A stretch of DNA of 51,928 bases from Basidiobolus meristosporus CBS 931.73 (taxonomy: Eukaryota > Fungi > Basidiobolomycota), in contig MCFE01000624.1 of NCBI GenBank assembly GCA_002104905.1, positions 1 to 51,928 of the forward strand. Direction: 5' to 3'. Positions 5,501 to 51,928 of this stretch are shown here, piece by piece. The translations under genes were made by a program, and so were the position numbers. The number at the start of each line of letters is the position of its first letter. The stretch's first letter is position 1. The notes below the pieces were generated by a model, which had not been told where the DNA came from, did not search any database, and saw only the letters and a list, made by a program, of their open reading frames with translations.

Positions 5501-7077
5501 GTGTCACACCAGGGTTGACGATATTTGCTGGTCAGAAAACATGTTTGTGTACCTGCAGCCATGATTACAAAATCAAATCAAATGAAGCCTCACTACCAGG
5601 CCTGGTGCCTAAATAATCACCATCTGCAACAGCCCAGCCTATCTCTTAAAGCCTACCACCAAGCAGCACCATAGGTGAACGGTGGACTGTTGTACATAGA
5701 AACCAGACCTGGTACTTTGGCTGGATAAAGTCTGCTGTAGTGGTGCAAAATTGAGGATAGGTGTACCCCCTTGCCATAGGAGCGATATATAATTAAGGAT
5801 TATCGGCCTTTTTTCCGATGTAACTTAAGCTAGCCCAACTTCCCCAGATCTTGCTACAGCTATAGGCGATAATTAACCTGGTTGTTGAAAACTAGTTGGT
5901 CATAGTGCGTTGTTTCGGGGCAATGTAATAGCTGGCATTTTTTCCTTTGCGTACAGGTTCATCTTTTACTCTACACATAAGGCCGATTGCAGCACTGCAG
6001 TGTATTTAATTTTGACAGGAATGCCAATTTTAATCGTGTGACATTCATTATCGAAAAGACAGAGGTAAGGTGAACGGATCGGAAAATCATTTACGCACCG
6101 TCGAAGCATTCATAAACATCACACAAGTTGCCATCAAAGAAAAAATATTCGGAGGCATCCTTCGATAGACCCCCTGGCTAGCGTTTCTCATCGAAGCAGT
6201 AATATGACATATGGCTGAATTACACCATCCTGACCATTCCTTACTAGTTGGCTTCTTGATTGGGAAGGGACACCTTGATTGCCTGCCTATGTCATTATCG
6301 AGTCTCCTCGTCCGAAACAATCAGGTTTCAAGGCTTGTAATATTAATAATACACTGGTAATCGGCTCAAGAAACCTGGAAGCCCACACACTTCCCATGCA
6401 TTATACATGTTGAACTGTGCACAAATTACATAGCATGAAAAACCTGTGGCTACTCTGCAGTTTTTTCCGTCTCGATTGTGGTGAGTGAGCAGGAGCCCTG
6501 ATCAGAGTGGCAACCTCTTTGAATTGAGCCTGTTCACTCTCCTTTGAGGTGCCATGGACGTGATGATGGCTGGAGTACAGTACAAAACGCCTGTTACACA
6601 TGAGCAAGCTAGGCCCAACCAATGATCGCCACAGACCGAGGCAAATTGTCCACTGAGATATCATGCATGATTGATTTGAACTTGGGAGATATATCCCAAC
6701 TGACCGATTTGCCAATTTCCTGAATACATTTCAAAACTCCAACTGCTAATCTTCATTCGTGGTACACTGTGGTCTGCAGGTAGTATGGGTGGGGCGTTCC
6801 AGGTTTCGGCCGACAGAGAGATGACAGTCATTTTGGCGTGGATGGAGTTGGATTTATTAACGTTGTAACTAGAGCATCTGTTGACACCAGATGGATAATC
6901 TGAGCATACGAGGGAATCAATTACGATGCAAATATTGCCAATTCATACTAGATACTTGGTGTTTTTGTAGATTCGAAGACTACCCGGGGAGGAAGTATAT
7001 GCGTGAAGTGATATTTACAATAGGTTGAAGTGCCATGCTCATGCAAAAATACGCATCAAGCTCATGTTTCCTGGAAG

Positions 7078-43271: not shown

Positions 43272-46200
43272 CTAAACGAGGAATCCTTTGACCACGACGG
43301 TGGGCACCAGAGTCTGTTTCTTGAACTGCCCGGAGTCCACCGCCTTGGGACTGCTCACATCTTCCTTCCACACCGAGTTGATGTTCTGCAGTTTGGGTCC
43401 TTCCGTGGGATCCGCATCCCTCTTCCCGTTCACCGGTACGGTCACCGTAAGCTTCCCGGGTACGATCTGTACCATCTCGCTGTTGGAGTCCGCTGGTCGA
43501 TCCAGGAGTTCTAGGGTGTCCACATTCAGCTCCACGTCGAACAGATCTATGACGAATCTCCTGGCGGTGATACGGAAGTGGTAATGGCTTAATATACGAA
43601 CCACCTCGTAGAACAAGGAGGATCGGGTGAAGTATTCCGGCTGATCGTGCTTCAACCTGTTCGAAAGCGAATCAAAGATGGGTTACTGTTGGATCGTGGG
43701 CGGAGGGGGGAGGGGCTCGGGCTCGGGCTCAGGCTCAGGCTCCCCGAAGATGGAACATTTCCCACTTACTTGGTCAACACCCGAGAGCTAGAGTTCGCCA
43801 GGATATGGTTGCTAAGGTTCCCTATGTTCCGCAAGATCTCTACCTCCGTTTTGTCCAGGTTCAACTCCGGGTTGAACGGATCGTATTGTGACTGCTTGCC
43901 TTGGAACTTCCATGGGGGAAGCTGGAAGTCGATGGGAACAGGGGTTAATCGTATGATACTGAATCTCCTCGCCTCTTCCTACTTACCATCAGGAATTTAC
44001 TAGGGTCCTCTGGCACGCATAGCCCCCGAGAGGTTCCCAGTGCGATGTTGGCGGTTTGCCAACCGAACTCCTCCAGTATGTCCGCCCCTTGTGAGGATCG
44101 CGAAATCAGCCCTAGTACATAGTAGCCCGTGCTGGTGGGATTTCCAGGAGTGAGGGAGGGGGGGGGGAAGGATAGGGTTAGTGGGGGGTGGTGTCGAATT
44201 AACCGTGTGCTCGACTTAATTACCCTCTAAGAGATAGTACGGGGGAGTTCTCCGCGATGTCCACGATATTCTTGATCACGTCTTCCTCCTCCAGGAATCG
44301 CAATCCAATCTTCGTCGATCCGATGTGCCCCTAAAAAGGTTCCTACTGATGAGTGCACGTCCTCAATGTGGGTGGGCCAACTACGCCGTCAGTTCGGCTG
44401 GAACATACCACTGCCCACAGTATGGACTTCAGCTCGAGAATGGCGTGCTTGTCGCCGAAGTCGATCGAATAGGTGCGAAGGAATTCGGCGAAGTGCTTGA
44501 AATGACCTTTCTTGCGGAGAAGATCGCAGCCTTCCTTGGTTCGCGTTAGCCCGCCATAGAAATGGGGTGGGGTGAGCAGGACCGCAGGTCTAGTTGGTAA
44601 GGGAAATCATTAGGGTAGACCTCCTCAAACACAATCACAAGCAATACGTACGGATCGGGCTCTGGGTCCACATCACCACTGTCGAACTTCCCTGTGGTGG
44701 GGCTTTGAACGGGCGGAGCTGGGTCATTACTTAGCGCTTTCGACAATGCAAGCTCGAGATGGATGACATAGTTCTTATTGCGTCGCTAAGTTGCCAGCAT
44801 CGTCTGAAAGTTAGCTCAAATGATCACCGAAAATGCCGCTACATCACCACCACAAACCTCAAACCAGTCTTCCATTTCCGATTCTATGTAGTCCAGTTCA
44901 AGCAGATACCGGAATCCTGTAGAGGTGGATAGAAATCTGGCTCCCTGTCAGTCGGCATGTCACATAACTCCAGGTCAGCCTCGTATCGAATATTACCTTA
45001 ACAAAAGCGGGTTTCCGATGTCGCCGAGGTGCTCTAAACTTGGTCGTAATCGGACCAGGCTCTCAAGATTCTGTTGGTTCTTGCATGCTTCATCCAGAAC
45101 CTTCACTGCCATCTCGCACACTTCGACCGACGGGTCATACAGCTTAAAGAGATGTGTTGGTGGCCTATTATGAATGGGGAACAAACGTGGCTGCTTACCT
45201 GGGTGATCAACAGTCTAATGGCCCACTCGTTGAACTCATTACCGCTGGCTCGAATGATCGTTTGAAGGTATTTGGTAGCAAAAAGTCGGATATGCTTGCG
45301 TAAAGAGTTAACATGCTGCTGGCCATGGAGTTAAGTTGGTCGATGCTGAATCGATACCTTGTATGCGGATGTCATGATTTTAGATAAGATTATGCGAGGA
45401 TGGCCATCCCTGAGAATATATATGAATGAGTAAGAGTAGATGTGAATCTCAGACAGCTCACGCACATGCTATAATCCATGTTCCCGATGATGGCTCTGAT
45501 CAAATCGTCCCGACTGCGCAATTCACTAAGGTGGTAATACAAACTGAAGATCTTGAATTGCTCCATCAGCCAAACCCCCTCACTGTGCTGGCATAGTGTG
45601 CCTAACAACGTGAAATATCCGGATGTCAGGGTGGCTTCCATTCTCTCTCTTGAGAACATCGGCTCCTCTTCGGGGCTTCCATACACCTAGATACCCATGA
45701 ACTAGCGTCAGAATGCAAGGGCCCATTAGAAAAGTGTACAGCGCTACTAACGGGATCCAGCTGACTAAGGCACTCGCGGATCTGGCGTAAGAATTTGTTT
45801 TCGGATAGATATCGCACCCCCTCGGGGTTTGCCAGTAGTGTGGACATTAATGCGCACCCAATGTCCACGTACTGCATGTTTTTCTAATAAAGCTGGTGAA
45901 TTAGGCGGTGTCGAAAGAAACCACCCTCGCGAACGCTCAGCCTACCTCCGTTTTGGGAATGTTGGAGAATAATTGGTAAGATGGCCGGTAAAAACAAATC
46001 AGTCGTTTCAAGAATTTCGTGCCCTTTATGGCTTCCTCAAGACGCTTGGCGTTCAGCAAAGGGCCTTGGATTAGCTCCAAGATGAGTTCCCAATTCCACT
46101 TCGTGTACTCTTTTTCGCTAAGAACCTGCGTGTCGTTCAGCATATTCCTGAATTGCAAGTCGTCAATCTGTTTGCCCACTCGGATCTTCGCCTGCTCCAC

Positions 46201-48158
46201 CTGACGCTGCTCGCGGTTTTTTAGTTTCCCAGACCTGTACGGCGGTATATTAATACAAGTCTATGACAGACCGGTTGAATAGACATCGCAGAATTTACCT
46301 ATCTGCAGCACCGTTCACTGAATGTTGATCTAGTCTTCGCATATTATCGATCTGGCTTAGTGCGTCTGTGGCCACGTGTCGAAGCTTCTCGTCACCAAAA
46401 CTAGCAGCCATTTTAAACAAGCGTGGGAGTGCCTGTTGCATCCGTGAAGTTAGGATTAGAGGTATGCGAGAGGATTCACAGAGAACCCCACCTGTATCTT
46501 GGGCCCGTAAGAACCAGGTAGCAGTCGATTTCCAAGCTGTAGTACTTGGGCAACTAGTATGGTTGCAACCTCAGATGTACTCTTGCTCTCACTTTCAATC
46601 AGCTCGATGAGGATCTAGGCAAATAGATGAGCACCGGGGCAAGGCGATGTTCATAGAGATTGCTACACGAAATCTACCTCAATGAGACCAGCGTCAACGA
46701 AGAGGATTAAAAGTATGGCCAGGTGGTGTTCCACGAGGTCCAGGCCATTGCTTGTTTTGGGGCCACCTGTGGATTGGATGTATACTTCGACGGCCGGGGT
46801 TAAAGGAATTCGTGAAAAGGTGGAATAGGGTGGCTTACTTTGATTCAACTCCTTCATTGCTCTAGCGGGATTTTTGGGGTATTTGAACCGAAACAAGTCG
46901 AATAACATTTCTAGTACAATTTTCTAAAATCCTGACATTAGTTGCCTGTCTTATTGGCGAGAAGTCCATGTGTCCATAAAAACCTTAGTTTCTTTAAGAG
47001 GGGACTTTAATGAGAGTATGATGGATTTGATGGCCTTCTTGCTGTCCATAGAGAGATAGATCAGACCTGTTTGGGATTTTCGTTAGTCAGCGGAAACTTT
47101 TCTGCGTGTGTGTGTGTGTGTACTTACCCGTCCATGATTTCAAATAGGTGGAGACGATACGAGCGTGTGATTTCAGTCTCTCTTCATAGCCTTGAGCAAG
47201 TGTGTATGTATCGGTGAAGCTCGATATAACCATCTGTCGGGAAAAGTTTAACGCAATCGGTTGAGCGCGAGCCACTTGTGAAATATACGACAATTCCTAC
47301 CTCCAAATCAACTGCAGGTCGTATAAAGACACGACTTTGTGGCTTATCCACGATATAAAGCAAGGTCATAACTAAAGGGTCTATAATTTCTTTTGGACCA
47401 TCCATCAAAGCCTGTAACACCACCCTGACTCCTCCACAAGACACAACCAACTCTACATTCTGGATCACTGGTGAGGAAAGGAAGATCAGTAATGTCCACG
47501 CTAAGCATAAATCAAGGCAATGATTACTTAGTTCACACAGAGTCTCCAGACACACCAGTCTTATTCTATCGTCTGGCTGCTCGGCGATTGCTATTAATGC
47601 CCGAACTATTCCGGGCTTGATAAAGCTGGTCTTGTTTGCACAGCTGATTAAGCCTCTAGTCAGTTTCAGAGCTTGCTCGCGCTCAGGATCGAATTTTTGG
47701 TCCCTCATTAGAGTTCTAAGTAAAGCCAAGCGTTAGAGGGCTGAATGGGTCTTGTATATATCATGCAATCTTGCTCCCTTGCGAAAATTACCTTATTATG
47801 AACAGGTCAAAGTGGAACTCGAACATCAATTGGGGGGAATGCGGGCTTGTCAGTAGATATCGGCATATGCGAAAGCCCATCCACCGAATCTCCTTGTTTT
47901 GCTCGACTAAACATAGACGTAAGCTTCAGGGGAAGGAAAGCATTAGTTTGCCGGGATGGGCCAATAATTCCTTGGTCAAGATTAAAGTACTTGCCTCTTT
48001 ATGACGGTGAGAGTTTGTTCTTGGCTCAATTTGTGAGCTTCGCGCTTCATCAGTTCAGTTAAAACAATCAACTGCTCAAGACGTTCGTGCTCAGGTATCT
48101 TTAAGTCTCCAGATTTTTTAGCTACCTCCTCGAGGTGGTCATTGTCAATAATAGTCAT
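43272..48158 (-). CDS. RICTOR: TORC2 subunit RICTOR (Avo3/Tsc11/Ste20), about 22 exons
   Basis: Manual splicing gives in-frame Rictor motifs EREQALKL, WAIRLLITQ|LYDPSVEVCE, PPHFYGGLTRTKEGC, LKSILWAV|GHIGS, LSLRG|TGYYVLGLISRS and LSHYHFRITARRFVIDLFD. No frameshift was seen; the start ATG at 48158 is inferred. Confidence 0.93.
43712..43742 (+). repeat. Intronic hexamer microsatellite (GGGCTC/AGGCTC, about 5 units)
   Basis: GGGGCTCGGGCTCGGGCTCAGGCTCAGGCTC in the last RICTOR intron. Confidence 0.8.
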
Positions 48159-48879
48159 GCCTTCTAGCCGCAATCAGGAGGATAAATTGGATAGGATGAA
48201 AAATAAAATGTTCTTGAATAAATGCGAGTTATTGGAACCTCAGGAATGAGTTAGATATGGTTTGCTTCTGTGCAGAATGAAGGATGTTTCCCGCCGGGAA
48301 AATATATATTCTTCTCTATTAGTTATACGGGAATCACAAAAGCATTCAAAAAATAAAAGCAGTCAAAAGCTTCCCGAGTTGAGATTTGTCCGATGGCTTC
48401 AGGACTTGTAAGAAACAGAGGTTGGTTAGCGACGTGGTTCCTTGCTTACTGGAATAATCCACTTTTCCAGGGTCTGCTGAATTTCCAGAGAAACTTAACT
48501 ATTCTGTTTATCTCATGCTAGTGATCCTAGGAACATTCTAAGCCTTTATTGCTTGATGTCGGGACATCATTGGTTGAGAAAGCATGCTGAACAAAATAGC
48601 TTAATCATGACATTGATGACTAAAGCGAAGCCTATATGCGTCCCAGGGAATTCCGCAATCTTGATGGTATGGCGCTCTGATAATGTTATCCAATATCGTC
48701 GTATTTGTAATCTCGGTAAATATACGGATACACGGACTTATTTCCCAAAAGCAACCTTGGCCCCAAGTACGACCGTTTCAGAGGCTTTACGAACCTTACA
48801 CCAACAACGATCGAACTCCTGATCAAATCCCTCAGACACTTGACTTTTCTATACCCCTGTGAAGTTTTGGAACGCAAGT

Positions 48880-49383
48880 ATGAAATTATGCGTCGATCAT
48901 TCAGCGAAGAGGAAAAATCCTTTTGGTGAAGTCAGTCAATTACGGAAGGATATTCGCATCGAGGCAGACAAGAACACATCCTTTGGTATGTCCTCATCCA
49001 CAATTACTCGAGCACTCCTTCATCCACCTTGTTAAATATGATTTTGCAAAGGATCGATAGGAATATACGCGTTAACCCCTGAATCCACGAATCAAAGCGG
49101 CAATCCAAAACCCTCAAAGTGCTTGGGGCCTACAACTACGTGTGGGCAGTGTAAGAAGATTTCACTGACTGCAAGTTGTAGTTTTTGCGTTGAATTACTT
49201 TGTGGCAATTGCGGAATAAGATGTGAGCGGTGTGGGCTGAAGTTTTGCTCAATGTGTATTATCATCAAGTACGTATTTTTTCAGCCTTGAGATTCATTAT
49301 TCTCCGTGGCTAACAACTGTATGATGTGCAGATACGACGACTTATCTTCCGACTCTATACTGTGCCTAAGCTGCAAGGATTGA
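48880..49383 (+). CDS. SIVA-like zinc-finger protein; three exons (48880-48985, 49061-49268, 49332-49383), 121 aa
   Basis: Spliced product: MKLCVDHSAKRKNPFGEVSQLRKDIRIEADKNTSFG...TCGQCKKISLTASCSFCVELLCGNCGIRCERCGLKFCSMCIIIKYDDLSSDSILCLSCKD*. Canonical introns GTATGT..TAG (75 nt) and GTACGT..GCTAAC..CAG (63 nt) keep the frame. Confidence 0.8.
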
Positions 49384-50802
49384 GCAGTAATAATCTCCTG
49401 GAGAGATGCCGGTTGTCCCTAATTTCTCGTGTTGCATTCCCGTATCAACTGACTGGTTGTATTTATGACGTCTTTTAATCTTTTATTTTTAGTGAGCTTT
49501 TCGGCTCATGTCTGGTTTTTATCTATACATCCCAAGTAATGTGAGCTTCAGCAGTCGTACATACCCTTACCTCCCCAAATAACCTGCCTCAATCAATGTT
49601 GAGCATACGCTATATCAATTTCGGAGCCTGCGATTCTCAGCTTTGATGCTCTAAACCCAGGCTAATCGGCAGAAACATGCTCTAACCTTGTAGTTAGATA
49701 TTTCTTAGAGCGATTGATTAATAAACGATTTTGCGAATTTCAAATATTCTTGGGTGCGCGGAGACGCTTGATTGCCTCATATGCAGGGAGGGCGATTTCC
49801 TTCGTTGGCAAAAGACGTTGAGCTCAAGAGTGAAGGGAAAGCGGGCGACGCTTCTGGATAGAAAGTACATCTTACCTTACAAAGGGAGGCCGGGGGCGGC
49901 AATCTGTCGAAACCTCGTTAGCACATGTTTTCAGTGACTGTTGGCCATATCCACTTTGGGTGGCCACCTCCCCGTCGAAAAGCGCATAGCTCACACTGAC
50001 GGCTGTCCACCAGTGGAAAAGATGACCGGAGAAATGGCCTGACAACAAAAACAGGGAGGTGGTGTGCTCAGAGAGGCAGCAATTCTCACTCTTTCGAAGG
50101 AACTGGGCGGTGAGTTAAGGTGCATGCAGGTTGGCCGGAAATCGACCCTGCTGCTTCTGATTCGCAACCTTCCCCATAGCAATACAACATTGCGCGGTCG
50201 CTTACGATACTGGTATTGATACATAGCGGCAACAACACCAGTTCAGCCTCGCCTTCTCATCGCTGACAAAGGCAATGATCTGAGCAGTTGATTCACATTG
50301 GCTTGATCCGTGATCTGATAATTGCCATGGATCTGATACTCCTCTTCAGTATCCCAGCCAATTACTAAGGTACACACCCTCGCTTGCTCGTTGATCGACA
50401 GGCTGATACCTAGACTGATGTTAACGTGGTGTTTGGTCAAGCTCTGGTTTCAAATGACAAACAATTAATTCACGCCCACAAATGAATTCCAAAAGCGGCC
50501 TATACCAGCGCTGAGAGGCCCAAGATAACCAGAATTGGTAAATTCCTCAGGTTGAGTCTACTATCGGATTGATTAGAAATTGTTGGTGATCAGATTTGTC
50601 CTGATTATCCGCTCAACTACACTCGGTTGATTATAAATTCTATGTGACTTCAGTAAACGGGGTTACTTACGGCCAACCATTTTGGTAACCAGAATCTAGG
50701 TTGTACATAAATATCTCCAGCACACCGCTTTTTTCCGAAGGCTATTTCCGCCCAGCTTGGTAGCGTTTCTATACCTTGACAAAATCTCTTCGAAGCTTTC
50801 AA

Positions 50803-51928
50803 ATGTCCAGTAAAGCTCGCCTGTCCACTGAACTTGACTCGCAAGAGTCATTACCCCCATAGATAAAGCCACGGTTCTTGGCTCCGGCCGCTTTCGTTGG
50901 TTAATTCTGCTGTTCTCCTCCTTTCTAATCTTTGGAAGCTACTACTGGTACTTGTGTCTCGCGTTTGCTTTACTTTACAACAGCGACTAATTTGGCTGTT
51001 TCTTGTCCATACTTACAGCGGAGATACGCCGGGTGTCAGTATTGCCTTTGCAGATTTTCTTTTCGCTTGTTGGTTACTTACCGTTGTTGTTTCGATGTAG
51101 ATTATCAGCGTCCAACTGCGTGAACACTTGGAAGAAAGCATCGATATTTGGAATTATCAACTCGGAGTGCTGTATTCCATCGCTTCCCTCCCAAATATAT
51201 TCTTCCCCTTCTTCGGTGGAGTGCTCCTAGATCGATTGGGACGCAGACTCAACTTGATAACATTCGCAAGTTCTGTTTGCATTGGCCAGGCCCTTTTCGC
51301 CATTGGTGTCAGCGTCAAGGCATTCTGGCTAATGTGCATAGGGAGATTCTTGTTGGGATCGGCAACGGCTGTTTATCGGTAATTCAGGCGAAAATCACCG
51401 CCCAATGGTTTCGCTCCAGTAGGTTGGCCTTTGCGCTGGCTGTAAACATTACCATAGGTAAGGTTGGCTCTGCTATCGCAGACGCTGCCACAGCAGGACT
51501 AGAGAGACATACCGCCTTGACTTTACGAATTGGTTTGGGTTTATCCTCTGCCTGGTCTCTTTCGCCTGCGCCATGGGTCTTGTTATCCTAGACACCGACG
51601 AGAGAAGAGTGAAAGAAGGTGTTTTGGTTCTGGACGGGAATCAGTCATCCGAGGAGCGATTAAAGCTCAAAGAGGTGCTCGCTCTCGGTTCCAGGTTCTG
51701 GTTGCTCTTGGTGTACGCAGTACTTTTATACGGTAAGCAGTACTTCCACAAGTTTACTCTGACTTTGGCGGATCCTTATGCGGTCAACAAATTTAGGCGC
51801 AATTACATTTGGGTGGACCTCTAGTACTTTCCTACAAAGCAAGTGGTATCCTGGAAACGCCGTCAAAGCCGGTGCTGGTAGGTGGTTCAGCTGTTGCTTC
51901 CCCAAACAACCTGACTAAAGACGATGTG
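50803..51928 (+). CDS. MFSD1-like major facilitator transporter (3'-truncated by the window; three apparent 1-nt frameshifts)
   Basis: RFRWLILLFSSFLIFGSYY|CGDTPG|...LYSIASLPNIFFPFFGGVLLDRLG...GRFL-GIGNGCLSVIQAKITAQWF...WFGFILCLVSF...FLQSKWYPG, with GT-AG introns. Frame breaks occur near 50855, 51355 and 51520. Confidence 0.8.

What the first reader, a model, noticed from the sequence alone, without database searches (positions are those of the whole stretch)
48880..49383. Hidden SIVA-like gene in a fungus, missed by the ORF track
Three small exons splice to a 121-aa protein. Its N-terminus KRKNPFGEVSQLRKDIRI parallels animal SIVA1 (MPKRSCPFADVAPLQLKVRV). Its C-terminus has the SIVA Cys pattern CxxC...CxxC-x3-CxxC-x2-CxxC-x4-CxxC...YDD...LCxxC. 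SIVA1 is known mainly from animals (apoptosis, RAD18/PCNA adaptor) and I know of no yeast orthologue. It lacks the central death-domain-homology region, so it looks like a minimal ancestral form.
Basis: partly seen in the sequence, partly recalled or inferred. Interest (0 to 1): 0.75.

Follow-up and report, generated by a model that had tools for sequence, protein, structure and literature searches.

The report
Short SIVA-family gene in Basidiobolus
The three-exon gene is real and belongs to the SIVA zinc-binding family, but GenBank already annotates it, and similar short SIVA proteins occur in other early-diverging fungi, protists, algae, sponges and cnidarians, so SIVA is not specific to animals.

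Summary
The window is scaffold MCFE01000624.1 of the fungus Basidiobolus meristosporus CBS 931.73. GenBank already annotates it as K493DRAFT_320181, a 124-aa hypothetical protein.

The SIVA assignment holds on several independent grounds:
- Pfam Siva is the only credible family hit (25.6 bits, E 1e-5), just under the 26.2-bit cut-off.
- A profile of the two Basidiobolus proteins, searched against 1.84 billion proteins, retrieves named animal Siva proteins.
- 24 of the 26 aligned proteins (the query plus the 25 hits) match Pfam Siva.
- A fungal profile against an animal profile gives 99.5% probability with hhalign.
- The N-terminal KRKNPFGE motif and all 12 cysteines are conserved.
- Both introns sit at the same position and phase in two Basidiobolus paralogues, Radiomyces, Nematostella and Priapulus.

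The protein lacks the central region that carries the PCNA-binding box of the long bilaterian SIVA proteins. Its amphipathic-helix motif is degenerate, so a RAD18-PCNA adaptor role is unlikely for this copy.

It is a new member of a known family. Automatic database annotation already flags it, but no paper in the searched library describes it. Interest is modest.

The parts
48880..48985 (+). Exon 1: ATG to a phase-1 donor (aa 1-35 plus the first base of codon 36)
   Evidence: The junction was verified against public protein P0001. The same start is seen in the B. ranarum orthologue.
48907..48960 (+). Conserved N-terminal SIVA motif KRKNPFGEVSQLRKDIRI (aa 10-27). It fits a bipartite-NLS pattern: KR, 10 residues, then RKDIR.
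   Evidence: Alignments. BLASTP hit to mollusc Siva, E 4e-4. Pattern scan. The first 33 aa of mammalian Siva-1 are sufficient for nuclear import (PMC3935273).
48986..49060 (+). Intron 1 (GTATGT donor).
   Evidence: It is in phase 1, in the codon after the conserved aromatic residue, as in four other SIVA genes.
49052..49268 (+). Exon 2 (starting at 49052 or 49061): degenerate helix-motif region, linker, and five of the six CxxC pairs
   Evidence: (Pfam Siva E 0.0047 for this exon alone).
49269..49331 (+). Intron 2: 63 nt, GTACGT donor, CTAAC branch site, CAG acceptor, phase 2, in the codon just before the invariant Tyr
   Evidence: Same position and phase in P0003, Radiomyces, Nematostella and Priapulus.
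49332..49383 (+). Exon 3: YDDLSSDSILCLSCKD plus the stop codon (49381-49383). It holds the last CxxC pair.
49141..49374 (+). Cys-rich SIVA domain (C66 to C122 in P0001 numbering, interrupted by intron 2). It has 12 conserved Cys in six CxxC pairs and is predicted to form three Zn(Cys)4 sites.
   Evidence: Invariant or nearly invariant columns. hhalign 99.5% against the animal profile. AF2 block-mean pLDDT 75-95. FYVE/RIM-like cross-brace fold, Z 5-6.5.

Best explanation
Window 48880-49383 (+) is a real three-exon nuclear gene of Basidiobolus meristosporus (GenBank K493DRAFT_320181). It encodes a short SIVA-family protein of 121 or 124 aa, depending on which of two acceptors 9 nt apart is used.

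Shown here:
- It is homologous to animal SIVA at both ends. These are the N-terminal K-R-x-N-P-F-G-E motif and the C-terminal domain with 12 conserved cysteines.
- The gene shares both intron positions and phases with animal and other fungal SIVA genes.

Inferred:
- The C-terminal 60 residues fold as a compact three-zinc module, whose last 50 residues are a FYVE/RIM/RING-like cross-brace. The module would serve as a protein-binding surface.
- The disordered N-terminal tail carries a basic, bipartite-NLS-like short motif. In mammalian Siva-1 the homologous stretch drives nuclear import.
- The protein would therefore act as a small nuclear or cytoplasmic zinc-finger adaptor.

This copy lacks the central region of bilaterian SIVA1 that holds the PCNA-interacting box. 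Its counterpart of the amphipathic helix (the RAD18- and BCL-XL-binding stretch in human) is degenerate. So it probably does not bridge RAD18 and PCNA. The second paralogue (K493DRAFT_313076) keeps the helix motif and is the more canonical copy. The short architecture is widespread in eukaryotes and is likely the ancestral one.
For: Identity and annotation:
- an identical 124-aa protein with the same start and stop is annotated in the GenBank assembly.

Family membership:
- Pfam Siva is the top hit for exon 2 alone and for the whole protein (25.6 bits, E 1.1e-5).
- All ten best named ESM Atlas neighbours are Siva clusters, best score 0.95.
- The exhaustive profile search gave 25 hits at E<=1e-3, many aligned over query residues 9-124. 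24 of the 26 aligned proteins (query plus hits) match Pfam Siva, best E 2.6e-31.
- The hits include Nematostella 'apoptosis regulatory protein Siva', Priapulus 'Siva-like' and Tegillarca Siva.
- hhalign of the fungal profile against the animal profile gives 99.5% probability, E 1.7e-22.
- BLASTP against Tegillarca Siva gives two hits, E 3e-12 and E 4e-4.

Gene structure:
- Intron 1 is in phase 1 after the conserved aromatic residue. The last intron is in phase 2, in the codon before the invariant Tyr. Both hold in all 5 genes tested.

Conservation:
- The B. ranarum orthologue is 79% identical, with the Cys domain nearly invariant and the linker variable.

Fold:
- AF2 with 26 sequences gives block-mean pLDDT 75-95 for residues 61-124 and a disordered N-terminal half.
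- The fold matches FYVE/RIM zinc fingers at Z 5-6.5.

Functional mapping from papers:
- PMC3935273: the N-terminal 33 aa of Siva-1 are necessary and sufficient for nuclear localisation.
- PMC4068132: the PIP box is at human aa 83-96 and RAD18 binding at aa 40-58.
- No PIP box or GQLTL block is present here.
Against: - The Pfam score is 0.6 bits under the gathering cut-off.
- No transcript data were available, so expression and the choice of intron-1 acceptor are unverified.
- Zinc binding, nuclear targeting and the adaptor role are inferred from homology and a predicted model, not tested.
- The fold matches are middling (Z<8) and typical of many small zinc fingers.
- The family tree is unresolved, so orthology as opposed to deeper paralogy with animal SIVA cannot be shown.
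Confidence: 0.85

Rival explanations
1. It is a generic B-box, RING or FYVE-like zinc finger protein that only looks like SIVA because it is rich in CxxC pairs.
For: Weak B-box hit (E 0.08-0.1). PDB sequence search finds the TRIM39 RING region at E 0.0013. The fold resembles FYVE/RIM/RING cross-brace fingers. The Pfam Siva score is just under the cut-off.
Against: Siva is the only Pfam hit below E 1e-3. hhalign against the animal SIVA profile gives 99.5%. The independent N-terminal motif is shared. Two intron positions and phases are shared with animal SIVA genes. 24 of the 26 aligned proteins (query plus retrieved relatives) are Pfam Siva.
Confidence: 0.04
2. The gene reached Basidiobolus by recent horizontal transfer from an animal host. 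Basidiobolus lives in amphibian and reptile guts.
For: SIVA is best known from animals. In the tree, the nearest rows after B. ranarum include Priapulus and Tegillarca, but with no support.
Against: Two paralogues only 35% identical exist in the same genome. Members occur in Mucorales and Paraglomus and in Amoebozoa, glaucophyte, red alga, Colponema and a stramenopile. The best non-Basidiobolus hits are not animal. The introns are short and fungal in type, with a CTAAC branch site. The protein has the short architecture, not the long form found in the two bilaterians examined.
Confidence: 0.04
3. It works like human SIVA1, as an adaptor that bridges RAD18 to PCNA for PCNA monoubiquitination.
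For: It is homologous to SIVA1, for which this role was shown in human cells (PMC4068132). RAD18 and PCNA are conserved in fungi (established knowledge).
Against: The human PIP box (aa 83-96, Q85/I88) lies in the central region that is missing here. No QxxΨxx[FY][FY] motif or GQLTL block is present. The counterpart of the RAD18-binding stretch (human aa 40-58, the helix motif Y-x-x-T-x-x-L-L) is degenerate and contains Pro in this copy. AF2 predicts no helix there.
Confidence: 0.08
4. It is a decaying or unexpressed copy, a gene prediction without function.
For: No expression data were seen. The helix motif is degenerate relative to the paralogue. The Pfam score is sub-threshold.
Against: The reading frame is intact across three exons with canonical splice signals. 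The B. ranarum orthologue is 79% identical, keeps all 12 Cys and has an invariant C-terminal stretch (aa 90-124), while its linker varies. That is the pattern expected under purifying selection.
Confidence: 0.06

Closest known systems
Animal SIVA1 (apoptosis regulatory protein Siva; Pfam PF05458), long bilaterian form, e.g. Tegillarca P0026 (179 aa), Priapulus P0032 (183 aa), human SIVA1 (175 aa)
   Same: N-terminal K-R-x-x-P-F motif. C-terminal domain with 12 Cys in six CxxC pairs and an invariant Tyr (41% identity over 58 aa). First and last intron at the same position and phase.
   Different: The central ~60-65 aa are missing, that is the death-domain-homology region with the PCNA-interacting box. 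The amphipathic-helix motif is degenerate. The protein has 121/124 aa instead of 175-183, and the gene has three coding exons instead of four (PMC6171514).
Short SIVA of non-bilaterian animals: Nematostella vectensis Siva (P0012, 126 aa) and the sponge Corticium candelabrum protein (P0017, 121 aa)
   Same: Both share the short architecture: N-motif, short linker, Cys-rich domain. The three-exon structure with both intron positions and phases shared was verified for Nematostella only.
   Different: About 28-29% identity (27-33% across). The animal proteins keep the Y-A-R-T-K-x-L-L helix motif and the 'LQLKTHV' extension of the N-motif. The window protein has neither in canonical form.
Mammalian Siva-2 splice isoform (lacks exon 2, which holds the DDHR)
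   Same: It consists of the N-terminal region plus the Cys-rich region without the death-domain-homology region (PMC6171514), so it is similar in size and layout.
   Different: Siva-2 arises by exon skipping from a four-exon gene, and the skipped exon probably also holds the helix region. That last point rests on my recollection and on the Priapulus exon map, and was not tested on a mammal. The fungal gene has this layout constitutively.
Second B. meristosporus paralogue K493DRAFT_313076 (P0003, 124 aa, scaffold MCFE01000092.1)
   Same: Same length, same two intron positions and phases, same KRKNPF motif and the same 12 Cys. It ends with the same CLSCKD.
   Different: Only 35% identical. It keeps the canonical helix motif VYARTRLLLF that the window copy has lost. 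Its genomic neighbours differ.
FYVE / RIM / Slp4-type cross-brace zinc fingers (e.g. 2cjs_C, 5x6t, 2yw8)
   Same: The predicted fold of residues 75-124 superposes at rmsd 2.1-3.4 Å over 47-51 residues, Z 5.5-6.5.
   Different: There is no sequence-family match to FYVE: one search lists only Siva, plus a negligible IBR hit for P0002. An extra CxxC pair and a third predicted zinc site are present. The Z values are in the range common for unrelated small zinc fingers.

Membership tests
SIVA (Pfam PF05458, 'Cd27 binding protein (Siva)') | Match to the family HMM at or above the curated gathering score | tested here: inconclusive
   P0001 scores 25.6 bits against a cut-off of 26.2, E 1.1e-5, covering profile positions 99-169 of 173. 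It is the only hit. Exon 2 alone scores 17.1 bits. The database's precomputed annotation lists PF05458.18, marked 'faint'.
SIVA (Pfam PF05458) | C-terminal Cys-rich region: six CxxC pairs (12 Cys) with family spacing and an invariant Tyr | tested here: met
   C66, C69, C78, C81, C86, C89, C93, C96, C101, C104, C119, C122 and Y109 are invariant or nearly invariant over 26 sequences. hhalign of the fungal profile against the animal profile gives 99.5%, E 1.7e-22.
SIVA (Pfam PF05458) | Conserved N-terminal motif (M-x-K-R-x-x-P-F-x-[DE]...) | tested here: met
   KRKNPFGE at aa 10-17 aligns with KRRNPFGE in mollusc Siva and with protist and fungal members. There is a separate BLASTP hit at E 4e-4.
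SIVA (Pfam PF05458) | A search from this protein retrieves named animal Siva proteins | tested here: met
   The profile of P0001+P0002 against 1.84e9 proteins retrieves Nematostella Siva, Priapulus Siva-like and Tegillarca Siva at E 2.5e-5 to 8e-4. 24 of the 26 aligned proteins carry Pfam Siva.
SIVA (Pfam PF05458) | Shared gene structure (intron positions and phases) | tested here: met
   Intron 1 is in phase 1, in the codon after the conserved aromatic residue. The last intron is in phase 2, in the codon before the invariant Tyr. This holds in P0001, P0003, Radiomyces, Nematostella and Priapulus.
SIVA (Pfam PF05458) | Amphipathic helix region (SAH; motif [YF]-x-x-T-x-x-L-L) | tested here: not met
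   The window copy reads SFG(SIG)IYALTPES, contains Pro and has no predicted helix. The motif is present in paralogue P0003 and in most other short members, so this is a loss specific to this copy.
SIVA1, long bilaterian form | Central death-domain-homology region with the PCNA-interacting box (human aa 83-96) | tested here: not met
   The linker is about 30 aa, against about 95 aa in the long forms. No PIP pattern or GQLTL block is present. Sponge and cnidarian members also lack it, so it does not define the family as a whole.
SIVA (Pfam PF05458) | Zinc binding by the Cys-rich region, and binding of partners (CD27, BCL-XL, RAD18, PCNA, p53/Hdm2) | not testable with these tools
   This needs recombinant protein, with metal analysis and pull-downs.
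B-box zinc finger (PF00643) | Match to the family HMM at the gathering score | tested here: not met
   13.3-13.5 bits against a cut-off of 24.1, E 0.08-0.1, for exon 2 only. It is absent from the whole-protein scan.
FYVE domain | Sequence-family match as well as the cross-brace fold | tested here: not met
   The fold resembles FYVE (Z 5.1-5.5), but there is no Pfam FYVE hit even at E<=10.

The most novel reading that the evidence does not exclude
SIVA may be an ancient, pan-eukaryotic three-zinc adaptor, possibly as old as the last eukaryotic common ancestor. Its ancestral form would be the ~120-aa short protein: N-terminal basic motif, short helix, Cys-rich module. The death-domain-homology region with the PCNA box would then be an addition made in Bilateria. 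In that case the original function is neither CD27/apoptosis signalling nor RAD18-PCNA bridging. It could be found in genetically tractable early-diverging fungi (Mucorales) or amoebae. The published statement that SIVA1 counterparts exist 'only in higher eukaryotes' (PMC4068132) would be wrong.
Probability: 0.5. Interest if true: 0.5.

Novelty: new member of a known kind. Interest (0 to 1): 0.3.

Why it matters
SIVA1 is studied almost only in mammals, in apoptosis, p53/ARF control and translesion synthesis. A key paper states that it has no counterpart outside higher eukaryotes. The evidence here shows short SIVA proteins in Basidiobolus, Mucorales, Glomeromycotina, Amoebozoa, algae and other protists, with gene structure shared with animals. 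That gives the family a much deeper origin. It separates a conserved core (N-motif plus three-zinc module) from the central region that is present in the two bilaterian proteins examined and absent from the short forms. It also points to microbial models for finding the core function. The gain is limited because automatic annotation (Pfam, UniRef) already flags these proteins, and nothing here tests function.

Tried and rejected
- The word-indexed protein search with exon 2 (read through into the intron, by reference) and with the full public protein found only the two Basidiobolus proteins. With a 16-sequence alignment it added only two Mucorales members and one unnamed metagenome protein (P0029).
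- The look-up of the B. ranarum locus failed. So there is no DNA-level dN/dS and no check of which intron-1 acceptor is conserved.
- The second scaffold, MCFE01000832.1, is a redundant assembly of the same locus: 0 mismatches and 13 indels over 6 kb. It is not an independent copy and says nothing about selection.
- The first AF2 run, with 2 sequences, was useless (pLDDT 36).
- The PDB sequence search gave only weak RING and C1 hits. Foldseek against PDB gave nothing at E<=1e-3.
- The maximum-likelihood tree of 29 family members is star-like. Only the Basidiobolus pair and the Mucorales trio are supported. It cannot place the fungal genes or test transfer.
- Literature searches for fungal or non-metazoan SIVA, and for the family accessions, found nothing relevant.
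- The scan's own notes have nothing on SIVA.
- Absence from Dikarya and yeasts could not be tested rigorously. No Dikarya sequence was among the named hits (about half of the 25 hits are unnamed environmental proteins), but the two-sequence profile has limited reach.

Full report
**Where the window comes from**

A protein identical to the translated gene is in public databases as 'hypothetical protein K493DRAFT_320181 [Basidiobolus meristosporus CBS 931.73]' (P0001, 124 aa). Its encoding contig is MCFE01000624.1 of assembly GCA_002104905.1. That contig is 51,928 bases long, the same as the window. So the gene is missing only from a prokaryote-style ORF list. The GenBank record annotates it.

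**Checking the observation**

- Exon 1 is 48880-48985, followed by a GTATGT donor.
- Exon 2 ends at 49268, followed by a GTACGT donor.
- Intron 2 has a CTAAC branch site and a CAG acceptor.
- Exon 3 is 49332-49383 and ends in TGA.

The public model uses the AG 9 nt upstream (exon 2 from 49052, after AAG). This adds Ser-Ile-Gly and gives 124 aa. Both acceptors are in frame.
- The upstream AG is the first one after the pyrimidine-rich stretch.
- The downstream AG has the better -3 base, and its product matches the 121-aa length of the B. ranarum protein.
- Only transcript data can decide between them.

Two spacers are one residue too short. The true spacers are x4 and x3.

- Exons 1 and 2 were searched by reference.
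- Exon 3 (16 aa) is under the tools' 20-residue minimum and was left out.
- Whole-protein tests used the public 124-aa model P0001 and the 121-aa B. ranarum protein P0002.
- In some searches, a script checked splice junctions of public gene models. It translated short windows across candidate GT...AG pairs and compared them with the public proteins.

**Is it SIVA?**

Exon 2 alone has Pfam Siva as its best hit (17.1 bits, E 0.0047). B-box reaches only E 0.08. P0001 scores 25.6 bits (E 1.1e-5) over profile positions 99-169 of 173. That is 0.6 bits under the gathering score, and no other family appears. P0002 scores 23.6 bits. All ten best named ESM Atlas neighbours are Siva clusters, best score 0.95 with 212 shared features.

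A profile of P0001+P0002 was searched without a word index against 1.84 billion representatives. It gave 25 hits at E<=1e-3, and many aligned over query residues 9-124, that is both ends of the protein. Of the 26 aligned proteins (the query plus these hits), 24 match Pfam Siva, best E 2.6e-31. The named hits include:
- Nematostella 'apoptosis regulatory protein Siva' (126 aa)
- Priapulus 'Siva-like'
- Tegillarca 'Apoptosis regulatory protein Siva'

A fungal profile against an animal profile gives hhalign probability 99.5%, E 1.7e-22. BLASTP of P0001 against the mollusc protein gives two separate hits:
- the Cys-rich domain, 41% identity over 58 aa, E 3e-12
- the N-terminal motif, KRKNPFGEVSQLRKDIRI against KRRNPFGEYSPMQLKTHV, E 4e-4

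**Independent evidence from gene structure**

I located the introns in five genes: the window gene, the second B. meristosporus paralogue, Radiomyces spectabilis, Nematostella vectensis and Priapulus caudatus.
- In all five, the first intron is in phase 1, in the codon right after the conserved aromatic residue: TSF[G], AVY[A], AYY[A], KVY[A], VIY[E].
- In all five, the last intron is in phase 2, in the codon right before the invariant Tyr: III[K]Y, SAK[S]Y, SVI[D]Y, SIV[N]Y, SVV[N]Y.

Two shared intron positions and phases between fungi and animals cannot be explained by convergent cysteine richness. They also support the three-exon model itself.

**Distribution**

Fungal members found:
- B. 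meristosporus, two paralogues only 35% identical (the second is K493DRAFT_313076 on MCFE01000092.1)
- B. ranarum
- the Mucorales Radiomyces, Parasitella and Benjaminiella
- the glomeromycete Paraglomus

Members outside fungi and animals:
- Amoebozoa: Pyxidicula, Arcella, Paramoeba
- Colponema
- the stramenopile Cantina
- the glaucophyte Cyanophora
- the red alga Gracilaria, which NCBI names 'Cd27 binding protein (Siva)'

Most of these are 117-148 aa. The sponge Corticium (121 aa) and Nematostella (126 aa) are also short. The long forms (165-183 aa) with the central block GQLTLDSxGxL are the priapulid and the mollusc. Two unnamed 179-aa proteins (P0016, P0028) carry a canonical PIP box, QSSLLDHF, at residue 85.

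The tree of 29 members is unresolved and adds nothing. No Dikarya member was among the named hits; about half of the 25 hits are unnamed environmental sequences, and the search depth does not allow a claim of absence.

Han et al. [quoted passage not shown] The database evidence here contradicts that. I found no paper describing fungal or protist SIVA.

**Anatomy and likely mechanism**

AF2 with the 26-sequence alignment gives block-mean pLDDT of 75-95 for residues 61-124. The N-terminal half is low-confidence with no secondary structure. Residues 75-124 superpose on FYVE/RIM/Slp4 cross-brace two-zinc fingers. The best match is 2cjs_C, Z 6.5, rmsd 2.1 Å over 50 residues. These Z values are common among small zinc fingers, so they indicate a fold class and not a function.

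Twelve conserved Cys in six CxxC pairs imply three Zn(Cys)4 sites. This is an inference. From memory, it agrees with reports that mammalian Siva binds three zinc ions.

The N-terminal motif fits a bipartite-NLS pattern: KR, 10 residues, then RKDIR. A similar pattern recurs in several other members. In mammalian Siva-1, the first 33 residues are necessary and sufficient for nuclear localisation (PMC3935273).

My best reading is a small adaptor: a disordered tail with a nuclear-targeting or partner-binding short motif, tethered to a three-zinc protein-binding module.

**What this copy probably does not do**

In human SIVA1, the PCNA-interacting box is at aa 83-96 (Q85, I88) and RAD18 binds aa 40-58. 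The first lies in the central region that is missing here. The second corresponds to the helix motif [YF]-x-x-T-x-x-L-L at the start of exon 2.
- Paralogue P0003 keeps this motif (VYARTRLLLF), as do most short members.
- The window copy and its B. ranarum orthologue have SFG(SIG)IYALTPES, with a proline and no predicted helix.

**Is it a live gene?**

The frame is intact and the splice signals are canonical. The B. ranarum orthologue is 79% identical. The last 35 residues are invariant, all 12 Cys are kept, the N-motif is conserved and the linker varies. That is the pattern expected under purifying selection. No transcript data and no orthologous DNA were available.

The 'second contig' with the same protein is a redundant assembly of the same locus, with 0 mismatches and 13 indels over 6 kb.

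**Verdict**

The gene is a new member of a known family rather than a hidden gene. It is already in GenBank and flagged by Pfam and UniRef, but it is undescribed in the literature I could search. The useful outcome is the wider picture: a short, conserved SIVA core across eukaryotes. Interest is modest.

Noticed in passing
L003:3001-3498 (MCFE01000092.1, B. meristosporus): A second SIVA paralogue, K493DRAFT_313076 (P0003, 124 aa, 35% identical), has the same two intron positions and phases. It keeps the canonical helix motif VYARTRLLLF that the window copy has lost. It lies between a peptidyl-tRNA hydrolase gene and a PH-domain gene.
   Followed up: partly
window 45877-51928 vs L001 (MCFE01000832.1): The last 6 kb of the window are duplicated on another scaffold with 0 mismatches and 13 small indels. 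This looks like redundant assembly or a haplotig, not a true duplication.
   Followed up: yes
window 45880-47720 (-) and 50943-51382 (+): The neighbours are a RICTOR-family gene (TORC2 subunit), transcribed divergently from the SIVA gene across a ~1.16 kb intergenic region, and a sugar-transporter (MFS) gene model near the window end. The transporter model is only 100 aa here, against at least 448 aa (cut by the locus end) on the duplicate scaffold.
   Followed up: no
P0016 / P0028 (unnamed ENA assemblies, 179 aa): These long SIVA proteins carry a textbook PIP box, QSSLLDHF, at residue 85. That is the same position as the divergent PIP box mapped in human SIVA1 (Q85/I88).
   Followed up: no
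L005:1886-7082 (Priapulus caudatus SIVA gene): tblastn gives two hits that both cover protein residues 105-118, at 6073-6315 and 6675-6863. This suggests a short duplicated segment or alternative exon ends at the extra, bilaterian-type intron. The junction could not be resolved by my script.
   Followed up: no
It is unrelated to this finding and I did not examine it.
   Followed up: no
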